A DNA stretch of 63,881 bases, filler included, from Octopus bimaculoides (Eukaryota): the NCBI RefSeq assembly GCF_001194135.2. It is 5 parts of 5 records of this genome, joined end to end, with 100 filler letters (N's around TTAATTAATTAA, not from the genome) between each part and the next. Parts side by side here need not be neighbours in the genome. Positions count along the whole stretch, not along the records: positions 1 to 22,727 come from NC_068997.1; 4 more parts are not named here. One strand, given 5' to 3'. The notes below the pieces were generated by a model. It was not told the DNA's origin. It saw only the letters and a program-made list of their open reading frames with translations, and made no database searches. A program made the position numbers and the translations under genes. Positions 1,197-22,771 of this stretch are shown here, piece after piece. The stretch's first letter is position 1, and each line of letters starts with the position of its first letter.

Positions 1197-2080
1197 GTAT
1201 TTCATCCTCTTAGGAGCAATAAGTTGTCAAATGAGTATTAGTAATGAACAGTGGTTTAATTCAACTGACTGTGAACTGCAAACTGTAGCATTTGTTGATA
1301 ATCCTTCTACTTGCCCTGTGCATTTAAAAATGAGTGCAATTAACCAGTAAGGGTTAGTAATATGAAGTGCATTGGCTTTAGTAGACAGAAACTGATAGGA
1401 GCCCATCATGCATATATGTGCATATGCACATATATGTGTGCATATGTATGTGAGTGTTGGTGTGTGTATGTTTGCGTCTCCTTATAATTATATAATTATT
1501 GTAAATGAGTGTCACTGTCATAAAAGCAGTGTTGTTCATTTCCAGTATTCTACAAAAACATGTCTGGCCTCATGGAAATATTACTCCTCTTAGAAATAGT
1601 TAAGAGATAGCGACAGAAGGGGCATGTGGGCACAGAATTGAGTGGAATTCTTTGGGGTTTGGATAATTCACCTTTGAAAACATGGGTATTTCGCTTGACA
1701 TCCTCAAACAACCTTTATTCAAGGACCTTTTGAGCGGGATGGGCTACTTGACCTGAAGAAAATTCTAACTGGGCCCCACCTGCAAGGTCATGTGCTGTTT
1801 ATCTTGATATGAGACCACTATGTCATGCACATATGGTTGTGATGCATGTGCTTGATGTACCCTTATCAGACGGGTAGTCATGATGGGTATACTGGGCTTC
1901 GTATATTTTACCCCCGTGTCACTTTGATGGCATGCCCTGCTATCTCACTCAATAATAATAATAATTGTGTATGTTGTCATGAACACCCTCATATTATGCT
2001 TAACTATTCTGCCTTACTTTTAATTTTGTTTCAGTTTCTATATAAGCTGACACCCTAATCAAGAAGACAGTGATATCAAT

Positions 2081-2243
2081 ATGAAGAACATACTATTTAC
2101 CATAGTCTTCACGGCACTGCTTACCTTGGCTGCTGGCTTTGTCTATAAGTGTGACAATCAGGACTGTTCTAGCTGTCCTTCTGTGGAAAATTGTGAGAAA
2201 ACTCTAAAATGTGGTTGCTGTAAAATTTGTGTGAAATTCATTA
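2081..2243 (+). CDS. Gene 1 coding exon 1: signal peptide + N-terminal 8-Cys half of an IGFBP (IB) domain
   Basis: Acceptor ttttgtttcag at 2034 and ATG at 2081. Encodes MKNILFTIVFTALLTLAAG|FVYKCDNQDCSSCPSVENCEKTLKCGCCKICVKFI with a hydrophobic leader and an xCGCCxxC IGFBP-type motif. Donor A|GTAAGT after 2243 (phase 1). Confidence 0.9.
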
Positions 2244-3180: not shown

Positions 3181-3191
3181 ATTACCAAATT

Positions 3192-3898: not shown

Positions 3899-4003
3899 AG
3901 GAAGATGAAATCTGCATCTCTACAACCAAAATGCTTCTGCAAACTCATTTGGAATGTGCTACAGGACTTTTGTGTAATCCATATACCAAGAAATGTACTA
4001 AAG
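3899..4003 (+). CDS. Gene 1 coding exon 2: C-terminal 4-Cys half of IGFBP domain
   Basis: Acceptor tttattccag, donor G|GTATGT, 105 nt, phase 1-1. Reads (K)EDEICISTTKMLLQTHLECATGLLCNPYTKKCTK, matching the ExC...C..GLxC...C pattern that completes a 12-Cys IB domain. Confidence 0.88.
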
Positions 4004-4308: not shown

Positions 4309-4381
4309 ATCACAGTTTCCTCAACCAACTGCAAGAGAAAAAGCCTTCATTTAATAATACTGTCATCTGCCACAACGACAT
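4309..4381 (+). CDS. Gene 1 coding exon 3: start of degenerate thyroglobulin type-1 domain
   Basis: Acceptor tttattttcag, donor AT|GTACGT, phase 1-2, open frame (D)HSFLNQLQEKKPSFNNTVICHND(I). Phases join both neighbouring exons. Confidence 0.8.
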
Positions 4382-5231
4382 GTACGTAACATTGAATCTA
4401 TGTACTATTCCAGTTTTGTAGAATTGTCTATTGAACATGTAGTTGTTGATTTCTTATAAGCATATAGACATAAGAGTGGCTGTGTTGTAAGATGCTCACT
4501 TCCTAACCACATGGCTCCAGGTTCAGTCCTACTGCATGGCACCTTGGGCAAGTGTTTCTATTACAACCTTGGGCTGACCAACGCCTTGCAAGTGGATTTG
4601 GCAGACGGAAACTGAAAGAAGCCTGTCATATGTGTCTGTGTGTGTGTGTGTGTTTGTTTGTTTGTTTCCCATAACCTCTTGATTAATGATGTTTGTCTGT
4701 TTATGTCTCTCATGACTTAGCAGTTTGACAAAAGAGTCTAATAGAATAAGTACTGGGTTAAAATTCCTCAAGGCCTGACACAGCAGGAGCGCAGTCTAAT
4801 GATTGAAACAAGTAAAAAAAAAAATGAAAGATAAAACACCCCTGGTTTATATGAGATGAGGCACAATGTAGTGAGATGAAAATGATAAAAACAGCATCCT
4901 GATATTAGTTCTTCACTTGGCTATTTGCATTCTAGAACACTAAATCTTTTACTTGTTCCAGTCATCGGATTGTGGTCGTGTTGTGGCACCACGTTGAAGG
5001 GTTTAGTCATACAGTTCGGCTCCAGTATTTATTTATTTTTTTATTTATTTATTTTTTTCAATCTGATACTTATTCTATTAGTCTCTGTTGCTGAACCAAT
5101 AAATTACAGGGACATAAACAAACCAACACCAGTTGTCAATTGGTTGTGGGAACAAACAGCACAAAAAGGCACCCCCAGTTGCCTACACATATATATGTAT
5201 ATGTTTGTGTGTGTGTGTGTTTGTGTGTGTA

Positions 5232-5572
5232 AGGCACACGGCTCAGTGGTTTGAACATTGGACTCACAATCATGAGATAGTGAGTTCAATTCCAAGACTG
5301 GACTGTAAGTTGTATTCTTGAGCAAGACACTATATTTCACGTTGCTCCAGTTCACTTAGCTGTAGAAATGAGTTGCAACATCACTTGTGCCAAGCTGTAT
5401 CAGCCTTTGCCCTTTCCTTTAATTACTATTAGTGGCATGGGGAGAGGAGGCTGATATGCATAGGCAACTACTGGTCTTCCATAAGCAACCTTGCCCAGAC
5501 TTGTGCCTCGGAGAGTAACTTTCTTGATGCAACCCCATGATCATTCATAATCGAAGTGGGTCTTTACCCTTT
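5232..5572 (+). mobile_element. tRNA-derived SINE family C
   Basis: Head GGCTCAGTGG...GAGTTCAATTCC (A and B boxes). Second copy at 10482-10810, partial minus copy at about 18795-18955. Confidence 0.85.
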
Positions 5573-6061
5573 ACTTTGTTATTTTCTTGTTTGTATTTGT
5601 AATTGTATAACATGTTCTCTGGTTTTCTTTTTTTTTATCTTTGTTGCCATACACATTCGCTTGCTTTCCCTCAAAAAAAATTAAAGCTCTCAGCTTAGAT
5701 TTTTGGGGGCAACCAGATTTGAACAGTCTCAAGTGTAACTGCCCGAAACTGTAAGGATAATTTCGTAACTTGACTGATGAGAGAAACTTGCAAATGATCC
5801 ATCCTTGTTTTTCCCTGTCCATCTTTTTATTATTTTTTCTGTTTGTCTTCACATCATCTATCATTATTGTTGTCTGTTTACGTTCTTACCGCCCCCACCG
5901 CCCAAAAAAAATTGCTGGCCATGTGCCAAAATCTGAAACCAATATTTCTTAAAATTATTTCGTGGCATGGAAGAAGGTGCCCATCAAAACGGACTCACTT
6001 CATTTTTTTTTTTTTGTTTGTTTATTTCTTGTTTTACTTATTTATTTATTTTTCTTTCTAG

Positions 6062-6141
6062 ATGTTACTGCAGCTTTAAGGGACAAATACTTACAGGATA
6101 TACAGCTCTGCATATCAATCATCTTACTCCCTTGTCTTGTA
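6062..6141 (+). CDS. Gene 1 coding exon 4: CYC...C half of first TY domain
   Basis: Long pyrimidine tract + ctag acceptor, donor A|GTAAGT, phase 2-1. Reads CYCSFKGQILTGYTALHINHLTPLSC with the CxC..G motif of TY domains. Confidence 0.85.
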
Positions 6142-6587
6142 GTAAGTAATCTTGCTAACCTATTCTTTCCAACACTCCACTCTTCATTGTTCTTTCCTTG
6201 TTGTCTCCAAGCTGAGATTATTTATAAGACCATTCTTCTATAGAACTGAAATGACAAGAGTAAATAAAAATCAAAACCCTTAGCCTTTCAACATGTAAAC
6301 CAGCCATATCCAGCCCAAATAACTTATCTATTTTATGCTCAAACCAACCAGATTTGGCCTCTCATATCTATCCAATAGTATCATTCTAAAAAATTAAACA
6401 TTCACATCAGGAGTGGCTGTGTGGTAAGTAGCTTGCTTACCAACCACATGGTTCCGGGTTCAGTCCCACTGTGTGGCATCTTGGGCAAGGGCAAGTGTCT
6501 TCTACTATAGCCTCGGGCCGACCAAAGCCTTGAGTGGATTTGGTAGACGGAAACTGAAAGAAGCCCGTCGTATATATGTATATATAT

Positions 6588-6624
<37 letters not shown>

Positions 6625-6796
6625 AGTCAGTAAATAGTGGGGTTGTGTTAACCGCACATGGAGAAATAATAGGAAAATGAAATAAACATTTTCATTCTCC
6701 TTCTTCTTGATAATTTGCTTTTCGCAATGAAAACTGGTTAGAGATCTTTATTAAAATATGCTTCCAGTTTAGCATTCTGCCTTTTTTTCATTTTCC

Positions 6797-6827
<31 letters not shown>

Positions 6828-7211
6828 CTGTGTTTGTCCCCCCCCCCCAACCTCTCACAGTTGCCTTACCTGCTAGAAATAGCAGCACACATGCTCTTAC
6901 ATCAGATCCCAATGCTGGCTGTTCAACAACCAAATGAAGGTCAGATTTTCAATCTCAGGATCATCCTGATTCCAAAAAAGGGTATAGTATGTCTATGTAG
7001 AGCAAACGTAGACTGAGATTCAGGGATCCTGGACAGACAGAGTTTCACTTTTATTTATATAGATGATGGAAGCGTGTCAGTGTCAAACGTGTGTTTAGGG
7101 ATCAAAGGAGGAACCTGTGTTAAGGATCAAAGTTAAAACATATGATTGCAGATCTTTTTATTTGATATTTCTAAAATTTCTTCAAAGAACAATAGCAGCT
7201 TTCCTTTACAT

Positions 7212-7500
7212 CACAGGTTCTCAACCAGGGTCTATATCAAATTTTGGGAGGTCCACGCCCCAAAACAGTAAATTGGGGATCCACAATAGTATTTTAAGGG
7301 CCCCTGAAAAAATTTTGCTTTATATGTATGTATTGCAAGAAAGGGCTAGGTTTCTTTCTTTGGCATTTTACAACAAAATAGGAATTTTGAAAGACATTTC
7401 TATAAGACTAGATTTTAAGCATTAAGTGGCTATGGGGGGTCCACTGGAGTAAAATAGTAATCAAAGGGGTTCATTGATAAAAAATAGTTGAGAAGCCCTG
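7212..7500. mobile_element. Older hAT-type MITE
   Basis: Imperfect TIR (cacaggttctcaacc / agttgagaagccctg); 8-bp TSD CTTTACAT/CTTTAGAT (7/8). Confidence 0.65.
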
Positions 7501-7771
7501 CTTTAGATTAATACACGTCTTTATATGTGAACTGGGGTCAATTCAAAAGTTGTTTCAATGAATTCTATTTACTCAATGAACTTAAATTGCTTCAGTGGAT
7601 AACATCTGCACTTAAGAATAAATTTGGTAAAATGTAACATGTCTGTTGAGGATAGGAGCAGTTCTCTTATTGGAAGCTTTAACTTGTCAGTGTAAAAGAA
7701 TTGTACTAATCTTCTAGATAGATTTCTGTTTTGTTCTCTATAATCATATATTTTATTTCTTAACTTTACAG

Positions 7772-7962
7772 ACTGTGCTAGACACAAAGTTAACTATAAG
7801 AAATCAGGGTTACTTGGGAAACTGTTTCTGTGCACCAAAAAGGGTAGCTACGAGAACATTCAGTGTAGTGGGTCAAGTTGTTATTGTGCTGATGAATCTG
7901 GAAAACAAGTAAAGGATAAAGAAGGATTTCATATAAGTGAGATCGAGAGTTACCAGTGTTAA
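7772..7962 (+). CDS. Gene 1 coding exon 5: complete thyroglobulin type-1 domain + stop
   Basis: Acceptor taactttacag, phase 1. Reads (N)CARHKVNYKKSGLLGKLFLCTKKGSYENIQCSGSSCYCADESGKQVKDKEGFHISEIESYQC*, with six Cys and the G-x-Y...QC...CYC-x-D-x-x-G TY signature. TAA at 7960-7962, donor AAG|GTTTGT after 7967. Total CDS 612 nt = 203 aa. Confidence 0.92.
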
Positions 7963-8145
7963 TTAAGGTTTGTATTGTTTGTATTTTCATCGAGTTTACC
8001 TTTGACTTGCTTCCCCACTGCATCATATATAAACACTCGTACACACATATATAAACACATACACACACTCGTACACACATATAGACACACACACACACAC
8101 ACACTCGTACACACATATATAAACACACACACACACATACATACA

Positions 8146-8380
8146 GTGGGGTGTTGAAAAGTCTCTGGCTTTGGGTAAAAGAAAATACAGGAGGATCAGT
8201 TAATTATGATTTTATTCAACATATTCCCCTCTCAGATTCACACACTTATTGCAGTGGTCCTTCAATTCTTCTAAGCCTTATAAAAGAACTCTGAAGGTTG
8301 GGCCTCCAACCAGGCCTTTTGCAATACCCTTAAAGCCAGGAACTTTGCAGCACCCCCTCGTACATGCATATATGCAAGCA
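8146..8380. mobile_element. Tc1/mariner-type MITE
   Basis: Inverted ends ggggtgttgaaaagtctctggcttt / aaagccaggaactttgcagcaccccc, in TA-repeat context. Confidence 0.7.
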
Positions 8381-9258
8381 TGCATTTGTATGTATGTGTG
8401 TGTTTGTTTCGCTTTGTCTTGACATAGTGTGATTATTGTAAACAAGTGTCACTATCAAACAAGCAATGTCGTTCATTTCCAATATCCTGCAAAAACACAT
8501 CTGGCCATGGAGAAATATTAGCTTGCCTTGAAACAGGTACTTGTTAACAAGAGTTTTTTTTACTTGTTTCAGTCATTTGACTGCAGCCATGCTGAGGCAC
8601 AGCCCTGAAGGGTTTAGTAAAATTGATTCCAGTACTTATTTTGTCTTAAAGCTGATATTCTATCAGTTTTTTTTTTGTTTTTTTTTTGCTGAACCACTAA
8701 ATTATGGGGCCATAGAGACAAATCAATAATTTGGTGGTCACCAGTTGTCAAGTAATGGTGAAAACACACACACACATGGCACAGTTTCTTTTATTCTCTG
8801 TCTACCAAATCCATTTACAAGGCTTTTAATCCTGGAGCTATAACAGAAGACATTTGCCCAAGGGCCTACACTGTGGGACTAAGCCCAGAACCACATTGGG
8901 AAGCAAACTTTTTGCCACACACACCCATACCTGCATCATCATCATCATCATTTAACGCCTGCCTTCCATGCAGGCATGGGTTGGACAGTTTGACAGGGGT
9001 CAGCCAGGTAGAAGACTATCCCAGGCTACTCTGTCTGTTTTGGCAGGGTTTTTATGGCTGGATTCCCTTCCTAACACCAACCACACCATCTAAACCCTGC
9101 ATCTAAATGCAAAAAGAAAAATCCAAATTAATATAAATACATCTATCATCGATATTTAACTGATCCTCTACTGATCAGAAGGTGAATTATGTCCATGTCT
9201 ATAAATTTCAGACTATTTTGCACTGCTTATTTATATAATAATTTTCTGCTTATTTCAG

Positions 9259-9610
9259 ATTATATTTTCCAAAAGGAAGCATTCAGATGATTCTAGTGAT
9301 TCAAACTTCATTGTCTGTAAACTGTATTCAAAATCCTTTTTATATTATTGTTATAGAGATAGTAGTTAATAGTGGAAAGATGTTATCAATAGCCAAGCAA
9401 AAATAACTTTATCACCAACACAATATGATGTTAATGTTTTTCTTGTCACGTTATTTCCACGTTATTTATAATATTTCTTATTGATGAAGGCATTTCAAAT
9501 TTTGTTACGAATCTGTTATGCATTTAAGTGTTTAAGCATATTTTTATTAACTCATGCATTTATTACTTGATGTATTTTACCCAGAAATAAAATATTTTAA
9601 AGCAAGTCAG
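9259..9610 (+). other. Gene 1 probable non-coding 3'UTR exon with polyadenylation signal
   Basis: Acceptor ttttctgcttatttcag at 9258, unique AT-rich sequence, AATAAA at 9586-9591. The 3' end is approximate. Confidence 0.55.
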
Positions 9611-11184
9611 AGAGTGGATGTAGTTTTTATCTTAGCATCATCATTTCTTTTATTTATTTTTTACTTGTTTTAGTCATTGGACTGTGCCCATGCTAGGGCA
9701 TTATCTAGAAGTGTTATTTAATCAGACAAATTGCTCTCAGTACTTATTTTTAAGTCAGGTTTTCCTATGCTATTGGTCTCTTGCTAAACTGACAATGATT
9801 TAAACAAGCTATCACCAGTTGTCAAGTGAGGGCATACACATACACATGTGTGTATGTTTGTGTGTGTGTGATTAAGGAGTTTATTTCCCAATTGTGGTCT
9901 TGGGTTCAGGACCACTGTGTGATACCTTGGGTTATAATTCCTGGCTGACGAAAGATTTGTCAGTGGACACTAGAAAATGCCCATTGTGTGTGTGTGTATG
10001 TGTGTATGCCCTTACCTAGACACCATGTGATGGTTGTAAATGAACATCCTCGTCATACAAGCAAGATTATTCATCTCAAATCTTCTGTGATAAATATGTC
10101 TGAACATGGAGAAATACTACCCTTGCAAGGAAGCAAATGTGGATTGGCAACAGGAAGAGCATCCAGCTGTAGAAAATATCCCTCAACAAGTTCTGTCTGA
10201 CACATGCTAGCATAAAAAAATAGTTGTTAAATGATGATGATCATCATATATATCAGGTAGTTTCCTATCTGGCTGGCTCCTGTCAACTATCCTACCCATG
10301 CATATATGGAAGACAGACGTTAAGTGATGATGATATATATATACGACGGGCTTCTGTCAGTTTTCACCTACCAAATTCACTCACAAGACAATTAGTTGAT
10401 CCAAAGCTATAGGAAAAGACACTTGCAAGGGTGCTGTGCAGTGGGCTTTCAATTTGTTTGTCTTATAAAGTTTACTGAGGAAAGGTGCATGGCTTAGTGA
10501 TTTGAGCTTCAGGCTCACAATCACGAGGTAGTGAGTTCAATTCCTGGACCAAGTTGTGTATTGTGTTCTTGAACAAGACCCTTTATTTCACATTGCTCCA
10601 GTTTATTCATCTGTAGAAATGAGTTGCAACGTCACTGGTGCCAAGCTGTTTCGGCCTTTACCTTTCCCTTGGATAACATCATTGGCATGGAGAGGAGAGG
10701 CTGGTATGCATGGGCAACTGCTGGTCTTTCTTAAACAACCTTGTCTGGATTTGTGCTTCAGAGGGTAACTTTCTAGGTGCAAACCCATGGTCATTCATGA
10801 CCAAAGGGGGATTTCTTCACTGAGGAATTTCTTAAAACTCTTCTCTACTCCTAACCTTGTATAACAACATTGGAAAATATGGGTATTTCTGTAAGCATGA
10901 ATGAACAAATGATTGCATTTAACCCTTTTGCACATAAACCAGATATATCCAGCCCACATTTACTTGTTTTATGTTCAAACCAACCAGATTTGACCTCTCA
11001 CATGTACCTTACATTAAAGTCACATAATCAAAATCTCAAAACCACAAGATAATACCTGATTGATTCAAATCAATATGAATAAATAAGTATTACATTTGAC
11101 AGAGGAATCTGAATGTGAACAGGTTGAACTATAAGGTGAATTTATCTAAAGTCAATATGTAAAAATAAAAACAAAGACCTTTTC

Positions 11185-11312
<128 letters not shown>

Positions 11313-11640
11313 AACATGGTATTTGCTGATATAAAAATACATCCACATTAAGTTGGATACATACATATACATACATACATACACACTCAAATATGAATAT
11401 ACATGTATATACACACATATTTATACAATATGCATATGCAAAATCCAGGGCCAATGCAGAGGAATTAAGATATTATTTCTCTAACTTGAGTGTTTATTTT
11501 GAAATCTCACATTACCTCATGTATTCTCATCCAAAATGGAGATAAATAACAACATTCTCGAATGGATCACTTGAATAATTGTGGAGATCTTTCTCCATGA
11601 AACCACTGGTTGCCTTGTTAATCCACAAATAAAGTATATA

Positions 11641-11685
<45 letters not shown>

Positions 11686-13124
11686 AATACACACACAAAC
11701 ATAGTATAGGTAGAAGCATGGTTAAACTAATGGACATTTAGCATTTCAAGCAGTGTATTTAAATCTTTTGTATAGTGGCATCTAGAAAGACATGGGTTCT
11801 GTGTAAGCTAACTTCACTTTACAAAGAGAAGGTCTTGAGTTGCTTTGCCTTAAAATGGAATGTTAACAGGATTTATAAGATATATAAATTATTACAAACA
11901 AGATATGGAGATTTTAGATGTTATCTATTACAAACAGAGAATTAAGTTTATTTCCTTGATTTATAAAATTTTGTAAATATCAGAACAGATAAAAAACAAA
12001 TTTCATGGATAGTTTTAAGCTCTATTCTTCATTACTAGCAATGCATACAAAATAATTTGAAAACATAAAATGATAGACTTATTATTTAAATGTAATCATT
12101 TGTTTACTTAAAAAATTTCAATGGAAGTATCAAAGACGAGGAGAGGAAGAATATTGTAATTCAACAGTTTCAGATGAGACTAAATTTCTATAAAGTGAAG
12201 ATTATTTTTGTAAAAATGGCCTATATTTTCTACTGGCATTGAACTGGATTAAAGAGTGTTAAAATATTTCTCAGTAAATTTTCTAAAAAGATAAACTAAA
12301 AGATAATTTTTACAGTTGAAACTAACTGAAAGGATAACATGAAAATTAAGTTTGATATGGAAATTTTTCTCACATGTCTGAAACTTAATTAATGGATAAA
12401 ATTATTATTAATAATCATTATTAATAATAATAATAAAATGAATGAAAAGCAAAGTAAAGTGTATAACAGTTTTGTAATGAAAGTTGAATGCTTTCATCAT
12501 TGAAAACTATTTTTGAAAATGTTGGAGTGTCATGACTAGGAAACCAACATTACTATTAGATCATTAGATTGTATCAGTACTCATAAAAATTGTTTTTGCT
12601 AGTCTAATTCTTGACATCTCTGACCATAGATTTCTGCATTCAGTCAGAAAGTTCCTTTCAAAAGCATTGGTCTGGACAAGTTTTTTTTCTTTGTGTGTGT
12701 GTGTGTGTTTGTATGGAAGATTAACACTTGCAGATTGATGAAGGTCTTTTTTTTTCATACATTCCACCAATGATGTCCCAAAGAAAAGCAAGATTGGTAC
12801 AGCTTTGCATCAGCCATAATGTAGGTGCTACCATTTAGAACTTAAAGAGCTGGAACAGAGAATGCAAGACATCCCATTAGAAGCTTTAACAGTTCCAAAG
12901 ACTTGAATTAAATCTTTTTTTTTTTTTTTAAGTGACTGAAATATAAAATTGGTTTAAAGTTGATCTGAGCAAGATTTGAAATCAAAGTGCAGACCATCAG
13001 AACAAATATCACTGCACGTTCTCTCCCGTGTTCTAGTAATTCTGCCAATTTGCTACTTTTGTCCAGCTATACTAACAACATCATCCCACCATTAACTATT
13101 ATTTTCATATAGTAACTTCAGAAA

Positions 13125-13450
13125 TCATTGTACAATATTCCTGTGAGACATGGACACTGACAGCAGAAATCGAAAGACGAATCCAGACTACAGAGATTTC
13201 AGGAGACTTCTAGGAATATCATACAGAGATTGTGTCACGAGTGAGGAAGTGAAAAAAAAAAAAAAAAATAAGGCAGGCAATAGGGCCCTATGCAGAGACA
13301 GAGAGAGAAAGAGGTGGCAAAGCAACACCTGTGAGTGGACAGATCTAAAGATGAGAGATGCAGTGCAAGAGGCAGAAGACAAAGACATTTGTAGGGATCT
13401 GGTTGCAAAGTCATCGGTAGTGCCCCAACGGTTAGCCAGACTACAGGATA
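13125..13450 (+). mobile_element. RTE-like LINE ORF 3' remnant
   Basis: CETWTLTAEIERRIQ...FRRLLGISYRDCVTSEEV matches the conserved post-RT YGCETW...LRRILGI motif. Confidence 0.75.
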
Positions 13451-13789
13451 TGTAGTGTAGTGTAGAGACTCCTATCTTCCATAGTTCTGGAATTAACCTA
13501 CAAATAATGAAGTTATTGAATGAAACCAACCTGAAATAAATAGAAAAATAAATAAATGGCATTATTAATTCAATATTAAGTTTAATTATTAATTAATAAA
13601 CTTATATATAAACAAAGACAGTACATAACAGCATTAGATCAGTTAAATGTACATAAATCATCTTCTACTACTACTACTACTACTATTACTACTACTACCA
13701 CCACCATCTGTCTTCTATGCTTGCATTCATTGGATAGATGGTTCAAAATGATCTGACTGGTTAGCAGACTGCATCATGTTCCAATGATT

Positions 13790-14555: not shown

Positions 14556-14571
14556 CTATCCCATATATGAG

Positions 14572-14612
<41 letters not shown>

Positions 14613-14869
14613 GTATGTGTTTATATATATATATATATATATATACATATATATATGTGTGTGTGTGTATATTACTATTTAGTAGAAGTGACAGTGATTC
14701 AAGGTCCAAAAGTTTCGTGCATTAGCATGGACTTCTTATTTCCACTAAATATTAATAAAAATATACATATACTCATATTTTAAGTTCTATTTTTCCTGTT
14801 TGCACCAACATACCAATATATATATATATATATATATATGATAATAATAATAATATAAGTAATATATAT

Positions 14870-14941
<72 letters not shown>

Positions 14942-15070
14942 GCATACATACATATACATGGATACACACATGTATAGATGCATACACACACATATATGCA
15001 CATGCATGCATACAAACACATGTATCATTAATCAACATTTTAACATCCAATTTATCCATGATTGCTCCGG

Positions 15071-15120
15071 TCAGACAATATTGCACCTTCCAGAGATATA
15101 GTCAAACAAAGTCGCAGCCA
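15071..15120 (-). CDS. Candidate terminal coding exon of gene 2 (LAATLFDYISGRCNIV*)
   Basis: Acceptor tatgctttag, phase-1 compatible, 169-nt intron. It would give about 121 aa and an even Cys count of 10. Alternative acceptors exist (13140, ~11611). Confidence 0.4.
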
Positions 15121-15289
15121 CTAAAGCATATTTATAGGTTCAAAAGGTTTAAGATTTTTTCTTTCTTTTTAACATTTAGCTGCTCTCATCTGTTTAGTTC
15201 CATAGAAATAGACCATAAGTAGGATCTAACCTTATAAACAATCTCAGAGAAAATTAGGAGGGTATGTTTTGGGTAAGAATATTACTTAC

Positions 15290-15366
15290 GTTCTGAGGTA
15301 CCAGAAGAATCTGGATTCAAATACACTGGGTTGTTCACATGTAGAACATTCACACTAGGTTGACAT
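15290..15366 (-). CDS. Gene 2 internal exon, counterpart of gene 1 exon 6062-6141
   Basis: tgtttttctag acceptor, starts A|TGT as in gene 1, 77 nt, phase 2-1, donor C|GTAAGT. Reads CQPSVNVLHVNNPVYLNPDSSGTSE. Confidence 0.72.
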
Positions 15367-16028
15367 CTAGAAAAACATTAAACAGGAAATACAAAAAGAG
15401 AAGTGAGTCTATCTTTTTGATTGGTACCTTCTTCCAGATCATGAAATAATCTCAAGAAATATTTGATGCAGTATTGGTTTGAAATTTTGGTACAGGGCCA
15501 ACAATTTTAGGAGGAAGATGCCTAAAATCAATCAAATCAACCCCTGTGCTCATCATCATCGTTTAACATCCACTTTCCATGCTGGCATGGGTTGGACGGT
15601 TTGACATGGAGTTGACCAGACTCCAATTGCCTCTTGTGGCATGGTTTCCACTGTTGGATGCCCTTCCTAAGAGTTTCTTATTTCTTTACTGCTCACAACA
15701 CCAACGTCCTCTCAACGATTAGCCAGAGATGATTTTTAAAATGGGAATATTTGAAATAAACTTGACTGCTCTTACAAACAAGAATACTAAAAATGAACCT
15801 GACTGCTCTCAAAAATTAAGTAAAAAAAAAACATGAAAAATAACCCAGAATCCTTGTGGAATTTAAATACACAATTGAAGAGCTAATATCATGAGCTTGT
15901 TTTGATCCTATTGCATCATATCTCCTGTCAAAGAACTCTGATGGCAGGAGGGGTTGCTTATGCAAAAAATAAAATAATATGTTTAAATGACAATATCATA
16001 TAGATTCAAAGTTATATACCTATCATAC

Positions 16029-16104
16029 TTGTTTGTGACAACAAAAGGAAAGTAAGTAGTTATTTTAAATGGGAAATATTCTTCAAACTTCCAATAACTG
16101 TGAT
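16029..16104 (-). CDS. Gene 2 internal exon, counterpart of gene 1 exon 4309-4381
   Basis: Poly-T + gcag acceptor. Starts ATCACAGT exactly as the gene 1 exon does; 76 nt, phase 1-2, donor AA|GTATGA. Reads (Y)HSYWKFEEYFPFKITTYFPFVVTN(K). Confidence 0.72.
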
Positions 16105-16149
16105 CTGCAAAAAAAAAAAAAAATAAATAATAATATGTGGTTAATTATA

Positions 16150-17070
16150 GGTAACACAGCCATTTCTATTAGATCCTATCTCAATAACAGATGACAGAGA
16201 CCTCATTATGTTGGCTGGGGACCTCATTTAACATGCTAGACAACATCACAATGATTACCCAAATGTCCATGGAAGCTATGCTAACAGTAAAAGAAATGAA
16301 GAGGGTGAAATGCTCTTGGAATTCTGTGATGAAAATGATATGACCGTTTGCAACACATAGTTAACAAGCCAGCCAACCATTTGATCATCTACCAATTAGG
16401 CAAACATGCAAACCAGGGACAGGTAGCTTTGAGAACTAAGTCTTTCCTCAGTGAAGAATGCACCATACAACATGAGACCAGCAACCAGTGACTTCAAGAT
16501 AACATGTATGAATTTAAGCATAGAAGACAAACTGAAGGAATGAATGGAAGCTGAAATGGTCACAATTCCTTATGTAAGTTCAAGAAAGTATCCGGTAATG
16601 TCTATGAGGAGAAACAAGACAACCAATTGAAAGTCACAACCCAGATGGAGCAAGGTTTAAACAAGTAAAGGGGAAACATAATGATGAAATAAAGTAGTAG
16701 GTAGAGCTTAAAAGCTAAGAAGCAGGTCTGGAGGAGTTGCAAGAAGGTGGAATGTAAAGAATTATAGAAGAGAAGCTAGACATCCAGTATACTCAACCTG
16801 GTAAGAAGTACAAAGTTGCTAATGTTTTGCATCTTAAGGATTAGAGGTGTGAAGTGCTCCAAATTGAGAATTAGTGTATCAGTGTTAATCAGGATGTCCT
16901 TGGTGAAAAAGTGCATGTGTGACAGTCAATAATAGTAGGGTACTCACCCTCATTGATGCCAAGAGGAAAGAAACATGGAAATGTTACAAGGGACTGCTGA
17001 ATGATGACAGTGTGTGGAAGAAAGAAGGTTAAGTAAGATACAACAAAGGGTCTAGCAACTACAGCTGACA
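16150..17070 (+). mobile_element. Decayed RTE-like LINE (AP-endonuclease region onward)
   Basis: DRDLIMLAGD...HGSYANSKRNEEGEMLLEFCDENDMTVCNT...NHLIIY with stops and frameshifts. Confidence 0.8.
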
Positions 17071-17502
17071 ACTATAGGATACAAAAAGACCTTTAACCTT
17101 TTAGTATTTAGATTTCTTTGTCAAATGTAAAGCTTATTTATTCAAATTGTTTTGAATTAATCATGGATTATCTTACAGTTTTGAGAATTTGGTGATGTGA
17201 TTGTTTACCTTTAAAAGGCCATAGATGTATGAGATTAGATCTAGCTAGCTTTTTTTTAATATATAAGACAGGGAGAATATTTGAGCAGGATATGGCCAGT
17301 TTAAATGCTAACGAGTTAATGATACATGTGAAGGCAAAGTAAACAGTAGGGCCATTGAGAATAGTTGCTGAGCTGCCAGAAGTATCTGGCATTGTAAGAT
17401 GTATGTTAATCATTTGGTTGTGGTTATTTAGTCACAGGTCAACTCTGATCCAACAAGCTGATAATCAGAGGAATTCCATCTATAACCTTTCTGTCAGTTT
17501 AA

Positions 17503-18125
17503 CCCTTTAGCATTTAAACCAGCTGAAGCTGGCCTAAATATTTTACTGCTTTTATGTTCAAACTGGCCAGATCCAGCCTCTCACACTTGTTCTACAATGT
17601 CATTCTAAAAACAAACAATACCATTGTAGTGACACCTATAGCAGACGACTGTTATATATTCAATGTCCGGAGTTTTATCCACGCATGCGCAGGGACTAGT
17701 TCCGGAAGGAATACAGGAAGAGTCTCATGCGCATGCGTAGAGTTCGACACCCAGCTTTGGCGCCTTTTCTCACTCTCTTCGTTCGCTGATCTCCGTCGAA
17801 CCTAGACGTCCCACAGAGCTCTCTCCAACATTCCAGCACTAGAGCTACACCAATAACCACGAACTTCATTGACGGCGTCTCAGTAACCAAAGACGACGAG
17901 CTACCGAATTCCACAGTAAATAAATATTGTTGTGTTGTTCAGAATCTGCGTTCCGTTGTTTCTTCAAGAAATTTAATGTACGGAAGCGGAGTACACCTAA
18001 TGGTGTATAACCACTTCCCAACACCATCATCAAAATTCTGAAGCTAGAAGATAATGCATGATTAATTCAAAAGAATGTGAATAACTAAGCATTACATTTG
18101 ACAGAATAACATGAATGCTAAAGGG
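17503..18125. mobile_element. piggyBac-type MITE (host of the solo LTR)
   Basis: TTAA|CCCTTTAGCATT ... AATGCTAAAGGG|TCAA. Related copies at about 6275-6410, 10918-11130, 17095-17320 and 28960-29127. Confidence 0.75.
17625..18023. mobile_element. Solo LTR (Gypsy-like, 4-bp TSD)
   Basis: TGT...ACA termini, CCAT duplicated at 17621-17624 and 18024-18027, CpG-rich interior. Removing it restores the MITE sequence seen in other copies. Confidence 0.8.
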
Positions 18126-18292
18126 TCAATGAATAACAGACTTGAAAGAAAAAAAAAAAAGGTACTAAGGTTGATTTGTTCAATTAAAACTATTTTAAGA
18201 TGGTGCTCCAGCATGGTCGTAGTCCAGTGTCTGAAACAAGTGAAGCATAAAAGGAAAAGATAATATGATGCAGTTTAATCTGTGATACTTAC

Positions 18293-18455
18293 ATATAACT
18301 TTAGAACAAAATTCACAACAGTTACATTGACTTTTCTGACAACTTTCTATCATCAAACACCTAGAACAATCCACAGGTTTATGACATGTGAAGCTAAAAC
18401 CAACTACAAAAGTAATCAATGCAGTAAGGACAGCGATGATTAGCATGTTCTTCAT
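18293..18455 (-). CDS. Gene 2 coding exon 1: signal peptide + 8-Cys IGFBP-like half domain (paralogue of 2081-2243)
   Basis: Acceptor ttttaatttacag before 18494, ATG at 18455. Encodes MKNMLIIAVLTALITFVVG|FSFTCHKPVDCSRCLMIESCQKSQCNCCEFCSKVI. Same 163-nt coding length and phase-1 GTAAGT donor as gene 1; about 25/55 aa identical by hand alignment. Confidence 0.88.
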
Positions 18456-21400
18456 GTTAAAGTCACTGTCTGCACACTGAAACTTACTCAATGTCTGTAA
18501 ATTAAAAAGAAAAATTTAAATAATTGCAAATATAAATCTCCTGCTTGATTAGGGTTTCAACAAATGCAAAAATTAAAACGAAATTAAAAGACACAGGAAA
18601 AACACAATATGATTGTGAGCATGAATGAAAACACACAGGAGATGTGTGTGCGTGCGTGCACACGCAAGCATGGCATGTGGTTAAGAAGTTTGCTTTGGAA
18701 CATGTTTAGAGTTTTAATCCCACTGCATGGACTGTCAGTTGTGGTCTTCTACTATAGCTGCATGTTGGCCAATACCTTGCAAACAAAGTTTGTGGGGGCA
18801 TCTGTAGTTACACCAGGGTAAGGGTAAAGACCTCCTTTGGTGATGAATGACCATGGAATTACACCTACAAAGTTATCCTCTGGGCAAGGTTGTTTATGGA
18901 AGACCAGCAGTCGCCCATGCATACCAGCCTCCCCTCTCTGATGTAATCCAGGGACTGGTCGGCAAACCTTTTACCTCCAGCTTCGATGACATCACACCTT
19001 GCTTGCCACCCAAAAATATAACTGGATGTTTAAACCGATATTCTAGAATATTCGTTTTATTAACATTAATGATTTCTGACTTGAACAAAAGACGGTAAGG
19101 GTGTAAACAAATGATACAATCGACTGAATTAAACCATAGCTCTTTGCTGGTACTTAACTGGTGGCCTTTAGCAGGATATAATGCGAAATCAAACACCGAA
19201 ATTTGAAACCAGGAACCATAGAAGACCGGAAGTAAATACTTCCAGGTTTTTAGTTACAGACGCTCTACATTTATTTGAACATTTCTGATGCCGCCGTTGT
19301 TAATTTAATTAAAAAAGTTGACGAACTTGAATAAGTATAACAATTATTTCTACGGTTAATTAACTATAAGTCTTCTTGGGTGAGGTGGATCTGATACAAA
19401 GCAGCAGGGTGGGGAGCAGAAAACCATAGTTTTTAATCCATTATATTTGCTGACATGTACTTAAGAAATCATGGGGTAGACAGACATTGAATCTTGGTGT
19501 TAAGCTACATGGCTATAATTCCATGACATAAATATATAGAGGGGCATGTAAATAGATACAGATATGAGTATGTGTGTGTGTAAAGATAAAAGAAATCATG
19601 TAAAAAATAAAATAAAACAGATATTTAGAAATGGGAATGTACAATATGTATACGTATTTATGTGTGCATGTGCGTGTGTTTTCCCAGTTTCACACTATTT
19701 AATAAGCTAAAAGGATGAATTTTTCAAGAAATCTTTTCAGAAATAAGAATTTTGAAATTATGATAAGAACGTATAGAAAAGTGAAAAATTCCACTCACGA
19801 CGAAATAAACCTTGTTTGTAAACAAACATTTGCAACGACGCGTGTCAAATGGAACGCCTTTAGGTTTTTCCGGCGTTAATGAGAGCAGAATTATCACAAT
19901 CTATTAAAGTGTTACGTAGAATTTTCAAAAAGTGGCAAATTGTGTAAAAAATAGTCCAAAATGAAACTTTTACAATTAAATTTGGATCTAGTTAGTTTCA
20001 TTCGCAAAATAAGCCCCCTTTAATTTTGCTCAGATTGCTTTCAATTTAGATGTATCGATGTAACACTGAATTTTGGTAACGATCAACCAATTACTTTATC
20101 TCGTAAATTAAAGCATCTGATGTTAGGAATTAAAGTTGGAAAATTTTGGGTAATTTTAACCAATCAACAGACAGCGTGGCATTAGCAGCTTGTTACCATG
20201 ACATTCGCTGTGTTGTGTTTCACTTTACCCGTGTCTGTGCCGCACGTTGTTCTGTGTTGATATCGTGGAACAGAGAAACTGTGGGTGATACAGATAAATG
20301 TCACATTGTTTTTGAATTTTGCATGCAAAAACATATAGGATACGAGTATTCTTTTCCTTGGGACAAATTCTTTGTTGACAGGTGTTATTCTTATCATAGT
20401 TTACAAATCCAAGCATGAAAACGTTATTCAACTTTGGTGTTCTGGAGACAGACACCCTCTTTTCACACACAAACACACGCACTTATATATTAATGATGTA
20501 CACACAAATACATGACAAGTATACATAATACTGAAATATGCATAAAGTAAACACAAGCAGACAAATATATTAATATAACAATTTTTTTTTAAATAATAAA
20601 AATATACAATCAATGAAGAGACAAAAGAAACAGTAAAATGATACATGTTGATTTTATTAGGTATTTCTGTTTATTAAGAAACCTACAATGAACAGGTCCC
20701 GCTATCTAGGTGACCAAGTTAGTAGTGGTTATAACTTTTGTTGTTCTCTTTAATATGTCCATAGATTATGCCTCCAAACAAGACAGCTTGCTGTATAGAG
20801 ATAAGTTGTGTTTAACAGAGATGTCTCTGGTGTGTTAGCAGTAAATGAATGAATGCATGAAGACATACATTGGTTGTGCTTAGTGTATGTAGGAAAAGGC
20901 TTGATAGAAGTGTTTCTAGTAAGCATGAGATAACGACATTGAGTTTGGTCTATACTTGGTACAGCTCTGGTCAAACCATCCAACCCATGCCAGCATAGAA
21001 AATGGATGTTAAGGGCTGCTGCTGGTGATGATGATGATGATTATGATGTCTTTTGCTGATGTCCACATCTTGATATTATTTTCTCTGAACCAATTTTTAA
21101 ATTCTAATTCATCTGCAAAAAAAAATTAAAAAACAGGTTTTTTTCACATGTCTGAAACAGCTGTAGTGAACCTTAACCTATTTGTGTGTGTAGCCGAATT
21201 TGAACTCAGAGCATAAAAACAGATGAAATGCCACTAAGTATTTTGTCCGACATGCTGATGGTTCTGCTAGCTCATCACTGCTGCAATGACAAAATAATCC
21301 TTTATTAGGAAGGGCATCCAGCCATAGAAACCATGCCAAATCAGACTGGAACCTGGTGCAGCTCTCTAGTTTACCAGTTCCAGTCAATCTGTCTAACCCA

Positions 21401-22259
21401 TGCCAGCATGGAAAATGGATGCTAAATGATGATAATGATGATGACAATGATGATATAATAGTAGTGTGAAATATATTAAAATACTCACAACACATGCAGA
21501 AAAATCTATTCACAAATGTAGTTCTTTTCTGAGCAACATAATTTCATTCTGATGTCAGTGGCTATAATTTTATATGCCAAATATAAACAGACGTCAAGGT
21601 ACATTGAACAGTGACAGTGACCTAAATAAAAATTTTCCTTCTGGAAATAAAAAAAAAGAAGAGGTAATAAAAAAAGCAATAATAATAATATTAACAGTTG
21701 AAATTTTAATGTAAATAAAATTAGATGAAAACTGAAAGAAACCTGCAGGAATGGCAATAGGCACAGGCATAGCTGTGTGGTTAAGAAGCTTGGTTTGCAA
21801 CCACGTGGTTACAGGTTCAGTTCCTCTGTGTCCTCTACTATAGCTCTGGACCTCCCAATGCTTTGTGTGTGAATTTAGTAGATGAGAACTGTGTGGAAGT
21901 TCATTGTGTAAACACACATACAAGTACATACAACACACATGTATGTGTGTGTGTCTTTGTGTTTGGCTTGCAGCCAGTCCTTGAGAAATGATGTTGGTTT
22001 GTTTACATCCCTGTAACCTAGTGGTTTGGTAAAAGCAACTGATGAAATAAGTACTGAGATTAATTCTTTTACTTGTTTCAGTCATTTGACTGCAGCCATG
22101 CTGGAGCACCATCTTGAAGGGCTTTTGTTGAACAAATCGACCCCTGGGCTTATTTTTAAGTCTAATACTTATTCTATCACTCTCTTTTGCCAAACCATTA
22201 AGATACAAGGATATAAATACACAAAACACTGGTTGTCAAGCAGTGATGGGAGGGACAAA

Positions 22260-22722
<463 letters not shown>

Positions 22723-22771
22723 CTTTTNNNNNNNNNNNNNNNNNNNNNNNNNNNNNNNNNNNNNNNNNNNN

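What the first reader, a model, noticed from the sequence alone, without database searches (positions are those of the whole stretch)
15071..18494. Convergent paralogue that keeps the exon skeleton but has rewritten its C-terminal half
Seen: same 163-nt first coding exon, same 8 Cys and shared 5'UTR (agacagtga...ATGAAGAACAT). Two downstream exons have the same phases (1-2, 2-1), near-identical sizes (76 vs 73, 77 vs 80 nt) and the same first bases (ATCACAGT; A|TGT). Their products (YWKFEEYFPFKITTYFPF, CQPSVNVLHVNNPVYLNPD) have lost the TY Cys pattern and become aromatic-rich. No counterpart of the 4-Cys IGFBP exon or the full TY exon was found. Known: in IGFBPs the first 8 Cys form a self-contained disulfide ladder and the last 4 form a separate subdomain that contacts IGF. 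Inference: a neofunctionalised mini-protein, a stable Cys scaffold with a new tail, as seen in fast-evolving secreted or toxin families.
Basis: partly seen in the sequence, partly recalled or inferred. Interest (0 to 1): 0.75.

Follow-up and report, generated by a model that had tools for sequence, protein, structure and literature searches.

The report
Truncated octopus paralogue with rewritten tail
This is a real Octopus gene, already annotated but uncharacterised, that arose as an inverted copy of a neighbouring cysteine-rich secreted-protein gene. It kept the signal peptide and the first 8-cysteine module, lost two domain exons and gained a new aromatic tail that selection still maintains.

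Summary
The window is Octopus bimaculoides chromosome CM046617.1. The finding is NCBI gene LOC106877883 on the minus strand (isoforms of 120, 110 and 76 aa). It lies tail-to-tail with LOC106877888, a 203-aa protein with a 12-Cys N-terminal region and a thyroglobulin type-1 (TY) domain.

- Both first coding exons are 163 nt, with 8/8 Cys shared.
- The 5'UTR is homologous.
- Two downstream exons match gene-1 exons 3 and 4 in position and phase.
- No counterpart of the 4-Cys exon or the TY exon was found.

Two details are wrong. The annotated, conserved donor of the second exon is at 16020, not 16029.

O. sinensis has an orthologue (LOC118766694, 120 aa) with identical exon sizes, no indel, no stop and all 9 Cys kept. 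Neutral drift would rarely give this (about 2e-4 combined). An 18-codon stretch around the lone ninth Cys is hypervariable (dN/dS about 5). The rest of the coding sequence has dN/dS about 0.5. Gene 1 itself evolves fast (dN/dS 2.1).

The gene is therefore most likely functional: a small, fast-evolving secreted protein. The IGFBP label is only weakly supported. Function and expression remain untested.

The parts
19799..19829 (-). 3' part of the upstream exon of gene 2. It holds the ATG of isoform X3 (MFVYKQGLFR) and a donor C|gtgagt after 19799. It is probably the 5'UTR exon of the signal-peptide isoforms. Its 5' end was not determined.
   Evidence: The peptide was located and the sequence read. 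The same 10 residues open O. sinensis isoform X2. The exon region is 92% identical between the two species. It shows weak colinear homology to the gene-1 5'UTR exon region (E=0.018).
18293..18494 (-). Gene 2 exon holding 39 nt of 5'UTR (predicted acceptor ag at 18496-18495) and the 163-nt first coding segment 18455-18293. It encodes the signal peptide MKNMLIIAVLTALITFVVG and the 8-Cys module FSFTCHKPVDCSRCLMIESCQKSQCNCCEFCSKVI, and ends in phase 1.
   Evidence: tblastn against gene-1 exon 1 gives 45% identity with 8/8 Cys, E=3e-14. nhmmer gives E=1.5e-16. dN/dS between the paralogues is 0.26. The sequence matches XP_014782411.1 and XP_052830029.1.
17619..18024 (.). A 406-nt insertion in intron 1 of gene 2, specific to O. 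bimaculoides. It is relatively G+C- and CpG-rich and is not part of the coding gene.
   Evidence: It is absent at the orthologous point in O. sinensis. No other copy occurs in the loci held.
16020..16104 (-). Second coding exon of gene 2, 85 nt, phases 1 to 2, encoding (Y)HSYWKFEEYFPFKITTYFPFVVTNKYD(R). It is the positional homologue of gene-1 exon 4309-4381.
Evidence: NCBI proteins. The acceptor tract and ATCACAGTT are shared. nhmmer gives E=0.004, colinear.
15290..15366 (-). Third coding exon of gene 2, 77 nt, phases 2 to 1, encoding CQPSVNVLHVNNPVYLNPDSSGTSE with the lone ninth Cys. It is the homologue of gene-1 exon 6062-6141.
   Evidence: An nhmmer profile of exon plus flanks gives E=2e-19 over 15503-15192. 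The flanking introns align better than the exon body.
16020..16045 (-). First half of the hypervariable segment (codons 75-83).
   Evidence: Across codons 75-92, 16 of 54 nt and 12 of 18 aa differ between O. bimaculoides and O. sinensis. dN is 0.47 and dS 0.094. The scan statistic gives P=0.0017.
15339..15366 (-). Second half of the hypervariable segment (codons 84-92). It includes the conserved unpaired Cys.
13493..13530 (-). Terminal coding exon of isoform X1, encoding (R)WFHSITSLFVG and the stop codon. It has no counterpart in the gene-1 locus.
   Evidence: The same 38-nt exon occurs in O. sinensis. The surrounding 271 nt are 95.2% identical with no indel. No hit in the gene-1 locus.
12842..12849 (-). 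Start of the alternative terminal exon of isoform X2 (..SE-PL-stop).
   Evidence: The coding range reported ends at 12842. The acceptor and coding bases are identical in O. sinensis.
12385..12619 (-). Inverted copy of the gene-1 3'UTR exon segment 9378-9591. It shows that the duplication covered the gene through its 3' end.
   Evidence: blastn gives 65% identity over 239 nt, E=3e-13. nhmmer gives E=2e-6. Only this one extra copy exists in each locus, and it is also present in O. vulgaris.
2035..2243 (+). Gene 1 (LOC106877888) exon holding 5'UTR and coding exon 1 (2081-2243), which encodes the signal peptide and 8 Cys.
   Evidence: cDNA contig L003 (Logan SRR32601320) joins it to an upstream 5'UTR exon outside the window.
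3899..4003 (+). Gene 1 exon 2, the 4-Cys exon. It has no counterpart in gene 2.
   Evidence: No counterpart found.
4309..4381 (+). Gene 1 exon 3 (73 nt).
6062..6141 (+). Gene 1 exon 4 (80 nt).
7772..7970 (+). Gene 1 exon 5. It encodes a complete 6-Cys thyroglobulin type-1 domain. The stop codon is at 7960-7962 and the donor follows 7970. It has no counterpart in gene 2.
   Evidence: Pfam PF00086 gives E=1e-6. PDB thyroglobulin and saxiphilin chains match.
9250..9600 (+). Gene 1 3'UTR exon. The cDNA contig confirms it to 9432, and an AATAAA lies near 9585. The 3' end is approximate.

Best explanation
LOC106877883 is a functional, lineage-restricted gene for a small secreted protein.

Origin (shown): An ancestral gene had a 5'UTR exon, an exon for the signal peptide plus 8 Cys, a 4-Cys exon, two small exons, a TY exon and a 3'UTR exon. 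It was duplicated whole, in inverted orientation, well before O. bimaculoides and O. sinensis split. No trace of the 4-Cys exon or the TY exon remains in the copy. It kept the promoter-proximal region, the signal peptide and the 8-Cys exon. It also kept the splice sites and phases of the two small exons. The content of those exons has diverged beyond protein-level recognition. A new 38-nt terminal coding exon was recruited.

Selection (shown): Selection since the species split has kept the 120-codon reading frame, all 9 Cys and the splice sites. An 18-codon stretch around the unpaired ninth Cys has changed about five times faster at non-synonymous sites than at synonymous or non-coding sites.

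Mechanism (inferred):
1. The signal peptide is probably cut after Gly19.
2. The 8 Cys form a compact four-disulfide module that stabilises the protein.
3. The 66-residue tail is 23% aromatic and has two conserved blocks, YxSYWKFEE(Y/F)FPFKITTYFP and VNNPVYLN.DSS.TSERW.HS.TSLF.G.
4. The tail presents the hypervariable loop and free thiol as a binding surface. The thiol might also form a disulfide cross-link.
5. The partner would be fast-evolving and extracellular. It could be in prey, a pathogen or gametes, or it could be the gene-1 protein.
6. If the module is IGFBP-like, the protein lacks the counterparts of the mini-IGFBP subdomain and the TY domain, which carry the main IGF contacts in IGFBPs. 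It is therefore unlikely to act as a classical carrier of insulin-like peptides.
For: - Identity and annotation.
- Paralogy, colinear over six segments from upstream of exon 1 to the 3'UTR.
- No trace of the exon 2 and exon 5 counterparts.
- Age of the duplication: pS between the paralogues is 0.62, against 0.08-0.12 between the species.
- O. sinensis orthologue: exon sizes 163, 85, 77 and 38 nt are identical, GT/AG sites are kept, 94 of 120 aa are identical, and there is no indel or stop.
- Neutral expectations: P(no stop)=0.16, P(9 Cys kept)=0.073, jointly 0.013. P(no indel)=0.018, given 1.1 gap openings per 100 nt in the surrounding DNA.
- Rate heterogeneity: dN/dS is 5.05 in codons 75-92 and 0.49 elsewhere, with scan P=0.0017.
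- The 8-Cys module has dN/dS of 0.31 between species and 0.20 between paralogues.
- Family context: gene 1 has dN/dS of 2.14, Fisher P=0.022.
- IGFBP subdomain facts: Forbes et al. 2012, PMC3356058.
Against: - I could inspect no transcript or peptide evidence for gene 2. The Logan collection yielded a cDNA contig for gene 1 but none for gene 2.
- Whole-gene dN/dS is 0.89, and the tail alone (1.72) cannot be told from neutral evolution (Fisher P=0.6).
- Only two species were compared, so the numbers are small and the lineages cannot be polarised.
- The non-coding divergence comes from BLAST alignment segments and is probably underestimated.
- There is no Pfam, PDB or usable structure-prediction support for any fold.
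- The proposed mode of action is inference from sequence features only.
Confidence: 0.75

Rival explanations
1. Gene 2 is a transcribed but non-functional remnant. On this view it is a decaying duplicate whose reading frame survives by chance, and the gene models are artefacts of prediction on a relic.
For: - Two of the five coding exons, which encode the recognisable 4-Cys and TY parts, have been lost.
- No domain is detected.
- Whole-gene dN/dS is 0.89, and coding divergence (10.7%) is higher than non-coding divergence (6.8%).
- No Logan cDNA was found.
Against: - The reading frame, the ATG, all 9 Cys, the splice sites and the exon lengths are conserved with no indel between two species. The combined neutral probability is roughly 2e-4.
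- The duplication is several times older than the species split. A dead copy should already be broken.
- Substitutions are clustered (P=0.0017), and dN/dS is 0.49 outside the hotspot.
Confidence: 0.1
2. Gene 2 is a peptide precursor. The Cys module would serve as a carrier or pro-region. The tail would be cleaved at the conserved single Arg (TSER|W). The conserved C-terminal Gly would then be converted to an amide, releasing a roughly 10-residue hydrophobic amidated peptide (WFHSITSLFV-NH2, or WYHSVTSLFI-NH2 in O. sinensis).
For: - The C-terminal Gly and the Arg before Trp are conserved in both species.
- The terminal exon and its surroundings are the best-conserved part of the locus (95.2% identity).
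- The use of C-terminal Gly as amide donor is general knowledge, not a test done here.
Against: - There is only one monobasic site and no dibasic site.
- Isoform X2 replaces this exon altogether.
- No similarity to any known peptide family was found.
- The other conserved block and the hotspot would have no role.
Confidence: 0.07
3. The gene models are incomplete. On this view further exons elsewhere restore a full 12-Cys plus TY protein, so gene 2 is an ordinary paralogue.
For: - Introns are long and rich in repeats.
- The 4-Cys exon is short and fast-evolving, so it could escape detection.
- One local alignment to 13583-13385 scored above background.
Against: - That alignment is not reproduced in any other species pairing (scores 29-37 against a background of 25 +/- 5), and it is not colinear.
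- tblastn and three-species nhmmer profiles find nothing.
- Independent NCBI models in two species both end at 120 aa.
Confidence: 0.03

Closest known systems
Its own parent paralogue LOC106877888 (O. bimaculoides), with orthologues LOC115220918 (O. sinensis) and CAI9735574 (O. vulgaris): a 203-aa secreted protein with a 12-Cys N-terminal region and a TY domain
   Same: They share a homologous promoter-proximal region, 5'UTR and signal peptide. The first coding exon is 163 nt with 8 aligned Cys and a CxCCxxC core. The positions and phases of two small exons match, and a 3'UTR segment is homologous. Both evolve fast between species.
   Different: Gene 2 lacks the 4-Cys exon and the TY exon. Its two small exons encode unrelated sequence, keeping 1 of the 4 Cys. 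It has a new terminal coding exon. It encodes 120 aa against 203, with 9 Cys against 22.
Vertebrate IGFBP-1 to -6 (12-Cys IB domain with a GCGCC motif, a linker, and a TY domain)
   Same: Gene 1 has the same order of a Cys-rich N-terminal region followed by a TY domain. It has a CGCC-x2-C core and a C-x2-GL-x-C element that align with IGFBP-3, -4 and -5. The exon boundary after Cys 8 falls roughly where the IGFBP N-domain divides into its N-terminal subdomain and mini-IGFBP, an interpretation based on PMC3356058.
   Different: Neither gene gives a Pfam PF00219 hit or a PDB sequence hit. hhalign is only marginal. The spacing of Cys 1-4 differs. Gene 2 retains only the counterpart of the N-terminal subdomain. 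It lacks the part that carries Val49, Leu70 and Leu74 in IGFBP-5, and it lacks the TY domain.
Isolated N-terminal subdomain of IGFBP-6 (NN-BP-6, residues 1-45), studied as a stand-alone fragment
   Same: It is a short disulfide-rich N-terminal piece of an IB domain, studied as a separate fragment (cited in PMC3356058).
   Different: NN-BP-6 is a laboratory fragment of a full IGFBP. It has a different disulfide pattern and no aromatic tail. Homology to gene 2 was not shown.
Fast-evolving secreted Cys-rich families with a conserved signal peptide and a variable mature region, such as conotoxin superfamilies (comparison from general knowledge)
   Same: The signal peptide and Cys framework are conserved. 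Non-synonymous change is accelerated in part of the mature peptide, and the exon body is more diverged than the flanking introns.
   Different: There is no evidence of venom or salivary gland expression. The locus holds two genes, not a large expanded family. The hotspot is one loop rather than the whole mature region.

Membership tests
IGFBP N-terminal (IB) domain, Pfam PF00219 / PROSITE IGFBP_N | A significant match to the family profile | tested here: not met
   hmmscan against Pfam at E<=10 returns no PF00219 hit for gene 1, gene 2 or their isolated N-terminal regions. Only UniRef's name for the O. vulgaris gene-1 orthologue says 'IGFBP N-terminal domain-containing protein'.
IGFBP N-terminal (IB) domain, Pfam PF00219 / PROSITE IGFBP_N | 12 Cys forming six disulfides, with a GCGCC-x2-C core | tested here: inconclusive
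   Gene 1 has 12 Cys and KCGCCKIC. hhalign against IGFBP-3, -4 and -5 N-domains taken from PDB hits aligns most Cys columns but gives only E=0.013 with a probability of 3%. Gene 2 has only the first 8 Cys and QCNCCEFC. Disulfide connectivity was not tested.
IGFBP N-terminal (IB) domain, Pfam PF00219 / PROSITE IGFBP_N | The mini-IGFBP subdomain that carries the main hydrophobic IGF contacts | tested here: not met
   In gene 2 the exon encoding Cys 9-12 has no counterpart. This holds for gene 2 only. The role of the subdomain is taken from PMC3356058.
IGFBP N-terminal (IB) domain, Pfam PF00219 / PROSITE IGFBP_N | Binding of insulin-like peptides | not testable with these tools
   This needs a binding assay.
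Thyroglobulin type-1 (TY) domain, Pfam PF00086 | A profile match with 6 Cys and the QC...CWCV core | tested here: not met
   Gene 2 gives no hit and has no TY exon relic. For comparison, gene 1 meets the criterion: PF00086 E=1e-6 above the cut-off, and PDB thyroglobulin E=2e-8.
Paralogue of LOC106877888 (same gene family by descent) | Significant, colinear DNA and protein homology that includes non-coding flanks | tested here: met
   Exon 1: tblastn E=3e-14 and nhmmer E=1.5e-16. Exon 4 with flanks: E=2e-19. Exon 3 with flanks: E=0.004. 3'UTR segment: E=3e-13. All lie in the same order and in inverted orientation.
Protein-coding gene under selection (as opposed to a pseudogene) | Reading frame, splice sites and key residues conserved between species beyond the neutral expectation | tested here: met
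   Only two species were compared.
Protein-coding gene under selection (as opposed to a pseudogene) | Direct evidence of transcription and translation | not testable with these tools
   Only NCBI gene models with several isoforms in two species are available. No Logan cDNA contig encodes the X1 product, and X2 and X3 are not on record as gene products.

The most novel reading that the evidence does not exclude
Gene 2 and gene 1 form an octopus-specific pair of secreted effectors in an arms race. In gene 2 the first disulfide subdomain of an IGFBP-like fold has been freed from its ligand-binding half. It has been joined to a tail produced by overwriting old exons within preserved splice phases. 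The tail carries a positively selected loop around a conserved free Cys. That Cys would form a disulfide bond with a rapidly co-evolving partner, which could be the gene-1 protein, a prey or pathogen target, or a gamete receptor.
Probability: 0.2. Interest if true: 0.6.

Novelty: new variant of a known kind. Interest (0 to 1): 0.42.

Why it matters
It is a clean, datable example of how a new small secreted protein can arise. A whole gene was duplicated and two domain exons are now absent. The exon-intron skeleton and phases survived while the encoded sequence was replaced, and a new terminal exon was recruited. Selection then fixed the product.

The locus also shows that a cephalopod protein with the IGFBP-like order of domains (Cys-rich N-terminus plus TY) evolves with dN/dS above 1. 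That is not how a conserved hormone carrier behaves. It points to an interaction under conflict, such as feeding, immunity or reproduction.

The gene is already in NCBI as 'uncharacterized'. I found no paper that mentions either gene.

Tried and rejected
1. A relic of the 4-Cys exon at 13583-13385 gave a local alignment score of 59, against a background of 27 +/- 5. I rejected it because the other five pairings of O. bimaculoides, O. vulgaris and O. sinensis sequences score 29-37, which is within background. It is also not colinear.

2. The match 'SFNNFIIC' at 13523-13500 to gene-1 exon 3 (E=0.08) is in a different frame from the X1 coding frame and is AT-rich. I treated it as chance.

3. AlphaFold2 on four-sequence alignments gave mean pLDDT of 37 for gene 2 and 48 for gene 1. 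These are too poor to use, so I ran no fold search.

4. Word-indexed protein searches found very little. The first one missed the O. sinensis orthologue, which only the exhaustive HMMER search recovered.

5. The gene-2 region of O. vulgaris could not be reached. Locus L001 stops at the equivalent of window position 13483.

6. Paper searches for the locus and protein identifiers found nothing. A TY protein reported from the O. vulgaris salivary gland (PMC7693380) could not be linked to this locus.

7. Rfam and tRNA scans of the window found nothing.

8. A weak Pfam hit of the O. sinensis gene-1 N-terminus to PF12190 (fungal protease inhibitor, E=0.018) is below the cut-off and was not pursued.

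Full report
**Where the window comes from.** The interspersed repeats looked cephalopod. Protein look-ups then placed the window on Octopus bimaculoides chromosome CM046617.1 (GCA_001194135.2), with window position 1 at record position 19,289,447.

Two annotated genes lie tail-to-tail:
- Gene 1 is LOC106877888 (XP_014782418.1, 203 aa) on the plus strand.
- Gene 2, the finding, is LOC106877883 on the minus strand. It has isoforms X1 (120 aa), X2 (110 aa) and X3 (76 aa).

**Gene 1 structure.** My exon model is 2081-2243, 3899-4003, 4309-4381, 6062-6141 and 7772-7962. It translates to exactly the NCBI protein.

A 1,013-nt transcript contig from a public run (Logan SRR32601320, locus L003) carries the same five coding exons. 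It also carries a 5'UTR exon about 5.3 kb upstream of the ATG, outside the window. A 3'UTR exon starts at 9250, and the stop codon lies 8 nt before the last junction.

The protein has a signal peptide, then 8 Cys (exon 1) and 4 Cys (exon 2). Next comes a 4-Cys stretch split over exons 3 and 4 that loosely resembles half a TY repeat. A complete 6-Cys thyroglobulin type-1 domain (exon 5) follows.

The TY domain is well supported: Pfam PF00086 gives E=1e-6, and PDB thyroglobulin and saxiphilin chains match.

The IGFBP label for the N-terminal region is not well supported:
- No PF00219 hit appears at E<=10, and no PDB IGFBP hit.
- A profile-profile comparison with the N-domains of IGFBP-3, -4 and -5 lines up most Cys columns and the CGCC-x2-C and GL-x-C elements. 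It reaches only E=0.013 with a probability of 3%.
- UniRef calls the O. vulgaris orthologue 'IGFBP N-terminal domain-containing protein'.

I treat the module as IGFBP-like but unproven.

**Checking the observation.**
- Both first coding exons are 163 nt and end in phase 1.
- The proteins they encode are 45% identical, with 8 of 8 Cys aligned through two compensating one-residue indels.
- The 5'UTR motif is shared, and homology continues about 110 nt upstream.
- The exon at 15366-15290 (77 nt) matches gene-1 exon 6062-6141 (80 nt) in phase and first bases. Its flanking introns align strongly (nhmmer E=2e-19 over 15503-15192).
- The exon starting at 16104 matches gene-1 exon 4309-4381 at the acceptor tract, the first nine bases and the intron after the donor (E=0.004, colinear).
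- Neither tblastn nor nhmmer profiles built from three species find a counterpart of the 4-Cys exon or the TY exon between 12000 and 20500.

Two details need correcting.
- The NCBI donor of the second exon is at 16020, giving an 85-nt exon with three extra in-frame codons, not 16029.
- The coding end is not near 15071-15189. It lies at 13530-13493 in X1 or 12849-12842 in X2.

The gene also has an upstream exon with its donor at 19799. In X3 this exon is joined directly to the second coding exon, skipping the signal-peptide exon.

**Extent and age of the duplication.** Six segments are homologous in the same order and in inverted orientation:

| Segment | Gene 2 (minus strand) | Gene 1 (plus strand) |
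|---|---|---|
| 5'UTR-exon region (weak, E=0.018) | 19837-19527 | about 5 kb upstream of the ATG, outside the window |
| Upstream of exon 1 | 18634-18537 | 1967-2069 |
| Exon 1 | 18473-18265 | 2063-2271 |
| Exon 3 region | 16146-15993 | 4274-4410 |
| Exon 4 region | 15517-15132 | 5899-6298 |
| 3'UTR segment | 12619-12385 | 9378-9591 |

The 3'UTR segment has only this one extra copy, and O. vulgaris has the same inverted pair. The whole gene was therefore copied, and the two domain exons were most likely lost afterwards.

The X1 terminal coding exon has no counterpart in the gene-1 locus.

Synonymous divergence between the paralogues' first exons is pS=0.62. The same genes give 0.08-0.12 between O. 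bimaculoides and O. sinensis. The duplication is therefore several times older than that species split.

**Is gene 2 alive?** The exhaustive HMMER search found an O. sinensis orthologue that the word-indexed search had missed. It is LOC118766694, with isoforms of 120 and 76 aa.

I fetched its locus (L006) and rebuilt the coding sequence. The exons are 163, 85, 77 and 38 nt, identical in size to O. bimaculoides, with GT/AG at every junction. There is no indel and no stop. In total, 324 of 363 nt and 94 of 120 aa are identical, and all 9 Cys are kept.

In the surrounding aligned DNA (about 6.5 kb) there are 7% mismatches and 1.1 gap openings per 100 nt.
- About four indels would be expected in 363 neutral bases, so P(none) is 0.018.
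- Simulating 39 random substitutions gives P(no stop, ATG kept)=0.16 and P(all 9 Cys kept)=0.073. Jointly this is 0.013.
- Together these make neutral decay an unlikely explanation, at roughly 2e-4.

Substitutions are not spread evenly.
- Codons 75-92 span the junction of the second and third coding exons and surround the ninth Cys. They differ at 16 of 54 nt and 12 of 18 residues.
- In this stretch dN=0.47 and dS=0.094, so dN/dS is about 5.
- The rest of the coding sequence has dN/dS of 0.49, and the 8-Cys module alone has 0.31.
- A gapped alignment does not reduce the differences.
- A scan statistic gives P=0.0017 for such clustering.

The remaining tail forms two conserved blocks: YxSYWKFEE(Y/F)FPFKITTYFP and VNNPVYLN.DSS.TSERW.HS.TSLF.G. 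The 271 nt around the X1 terminal exon are 95% identical with no indel.

**Family context.** Gene 1 itself has 80 non-synonymous and 10 synonymous differences between the two species. This gives dN/dS of 2.14 (Fisher P=0.022), with every Cys kept.

Between the paralogues, the body of exon 4 is far more diverged than its flanking introns. Both genes therefore behave like fast-evolving secreted proteins with a fixed Cys framework.

**What it most likely is and does.** Four things are shown:
- It is a conserved reading frame.
- It has a hydrophobic N-terminal leader.
- It has an 8-Cys module homologous to that of gene 1.
- It has a 66-residue tail, 23% aromatic, with one conserved unpaired Cys inside a positively selected stretch.

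The rest is inferred. The protein is probably secreted, with cleavage probably after Gly19. The 8 Cys would make a stable four-disulfide module. The tail would present the variable loop and free thiol to a fast-evolving extracellular partner.

In IGFBPs the main IGF contacts lie in residues 40-92 of the N-domain and in the C-domain. The N-terminal subdomain adds a 'thumb' contact (Forbes et al. 2012, PMC3356058). If the module is IGFBP-like, gene 2 keeps only the counterpart of that first subdomain. I do not expect it to act as a classical carrier of insulin-like peptides.

The nuance is that the first subdomain also touches IGF.

**Rivals.**
- A transcribed relic remains possible (about 0.1). 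I could not see reads, and whole-gene dN/dS is near 1.
- A peptide-precursor reading is speculative (about 0.07). It rests on the conserved Arg before Trp and the conserved C-terminal Gly.
- Hidden exons that restore a full domain set are unlikely (about 0.03). The one candidate relic at 13583-13385 failed replication across species pairings.

**Limits.**
- Only two species could be compared for gene 2. The O. vulgaris locus held stops 13 nt short of the X1 stop codon.
- Structure predictions were unusable.
- No paper mentions either gene.
- Expression rests on NCBI models in two species.

**Verdict.** The feature is real and already annotated as an uncharacterised gene. It is a truncated and rewritten paralogue maintained by selection, with a local hotspot of positive selection. 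I rate it a new variant of a known kind and of moderate interest.

Noticed in passing
window 2081-7962 (gene 1, LOC106877888), compared with L005 10001-21775: Gene 1 evolves with dN/dS of 2.14 between O. bimaculoides and O. sinensis (80 non-synonymous against 10 synonymous differences). All 22 Cys are kept. Exon regions 1 and 5 are about 82% identical, whereas the neighbouring introns are about 92% identical.
   Followed up: partly
window 2035-9432 and L002 4616-4791: The cDNA contig L003 shows that gene 1 has a 5'UTR exon 5.3 kb upstream, outside the window. It also has an intron in the 3'UTR, with the donor 8 nt after the stop codon at 7970 and the acceptor at 9250. The O. vulgaris annotation (CAI9735574) mis-joins into that 3'UTR exon and loses most of the TY domain.
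   Followed up: partly
window 17619-18024: A 406-nt insertion in intron 1 of gene 2 is present only in O. bimaculoides. It has 46% G+C and 24 CpG, with two GCGCATGCG-like palindromes. No other copy occurs in the loci held.
   Followed up: partly
window 13350-13620: The area around the X1 terminal exon is 95.2% identical to O. sinensis over 271 nt with no indel. This is clearly above the 85-91% typical of the locus. Only 38 nt of it are coding.
   Followed up: no
window 19799-19829 and L006 10001-10031: Both species' annotations include an isoform that skips the signal-peptide exon. It starts at a conserved upstream ATG (MFVYKQGLFR) and would give a 76-aa product without a signal peptide. Whether this isoform is functional or a splicing by-product is unknown.
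   Followed up: no
window 2338-2397, 8939-8998, 15550-15609; also 4944-5004, 8555-8615, 9656-9716, 22064-22124: Several families of short interspersed repeats populate the introns of both genes, together with long (TA)n and (TG)n tracts at 11100-11700, 14560-15050 and 22250-22727. They produce many spurious self-matches between the two loci.
   Followed up: partly
L001 2490-9965: The O. vulgaris annotation has a 79-aa 'gene' immediately upstream of the gene-1 orthologue, over the region that holds the 5'UTR exon in O. bimaculoides. I did not examine it.
   Followed up: no
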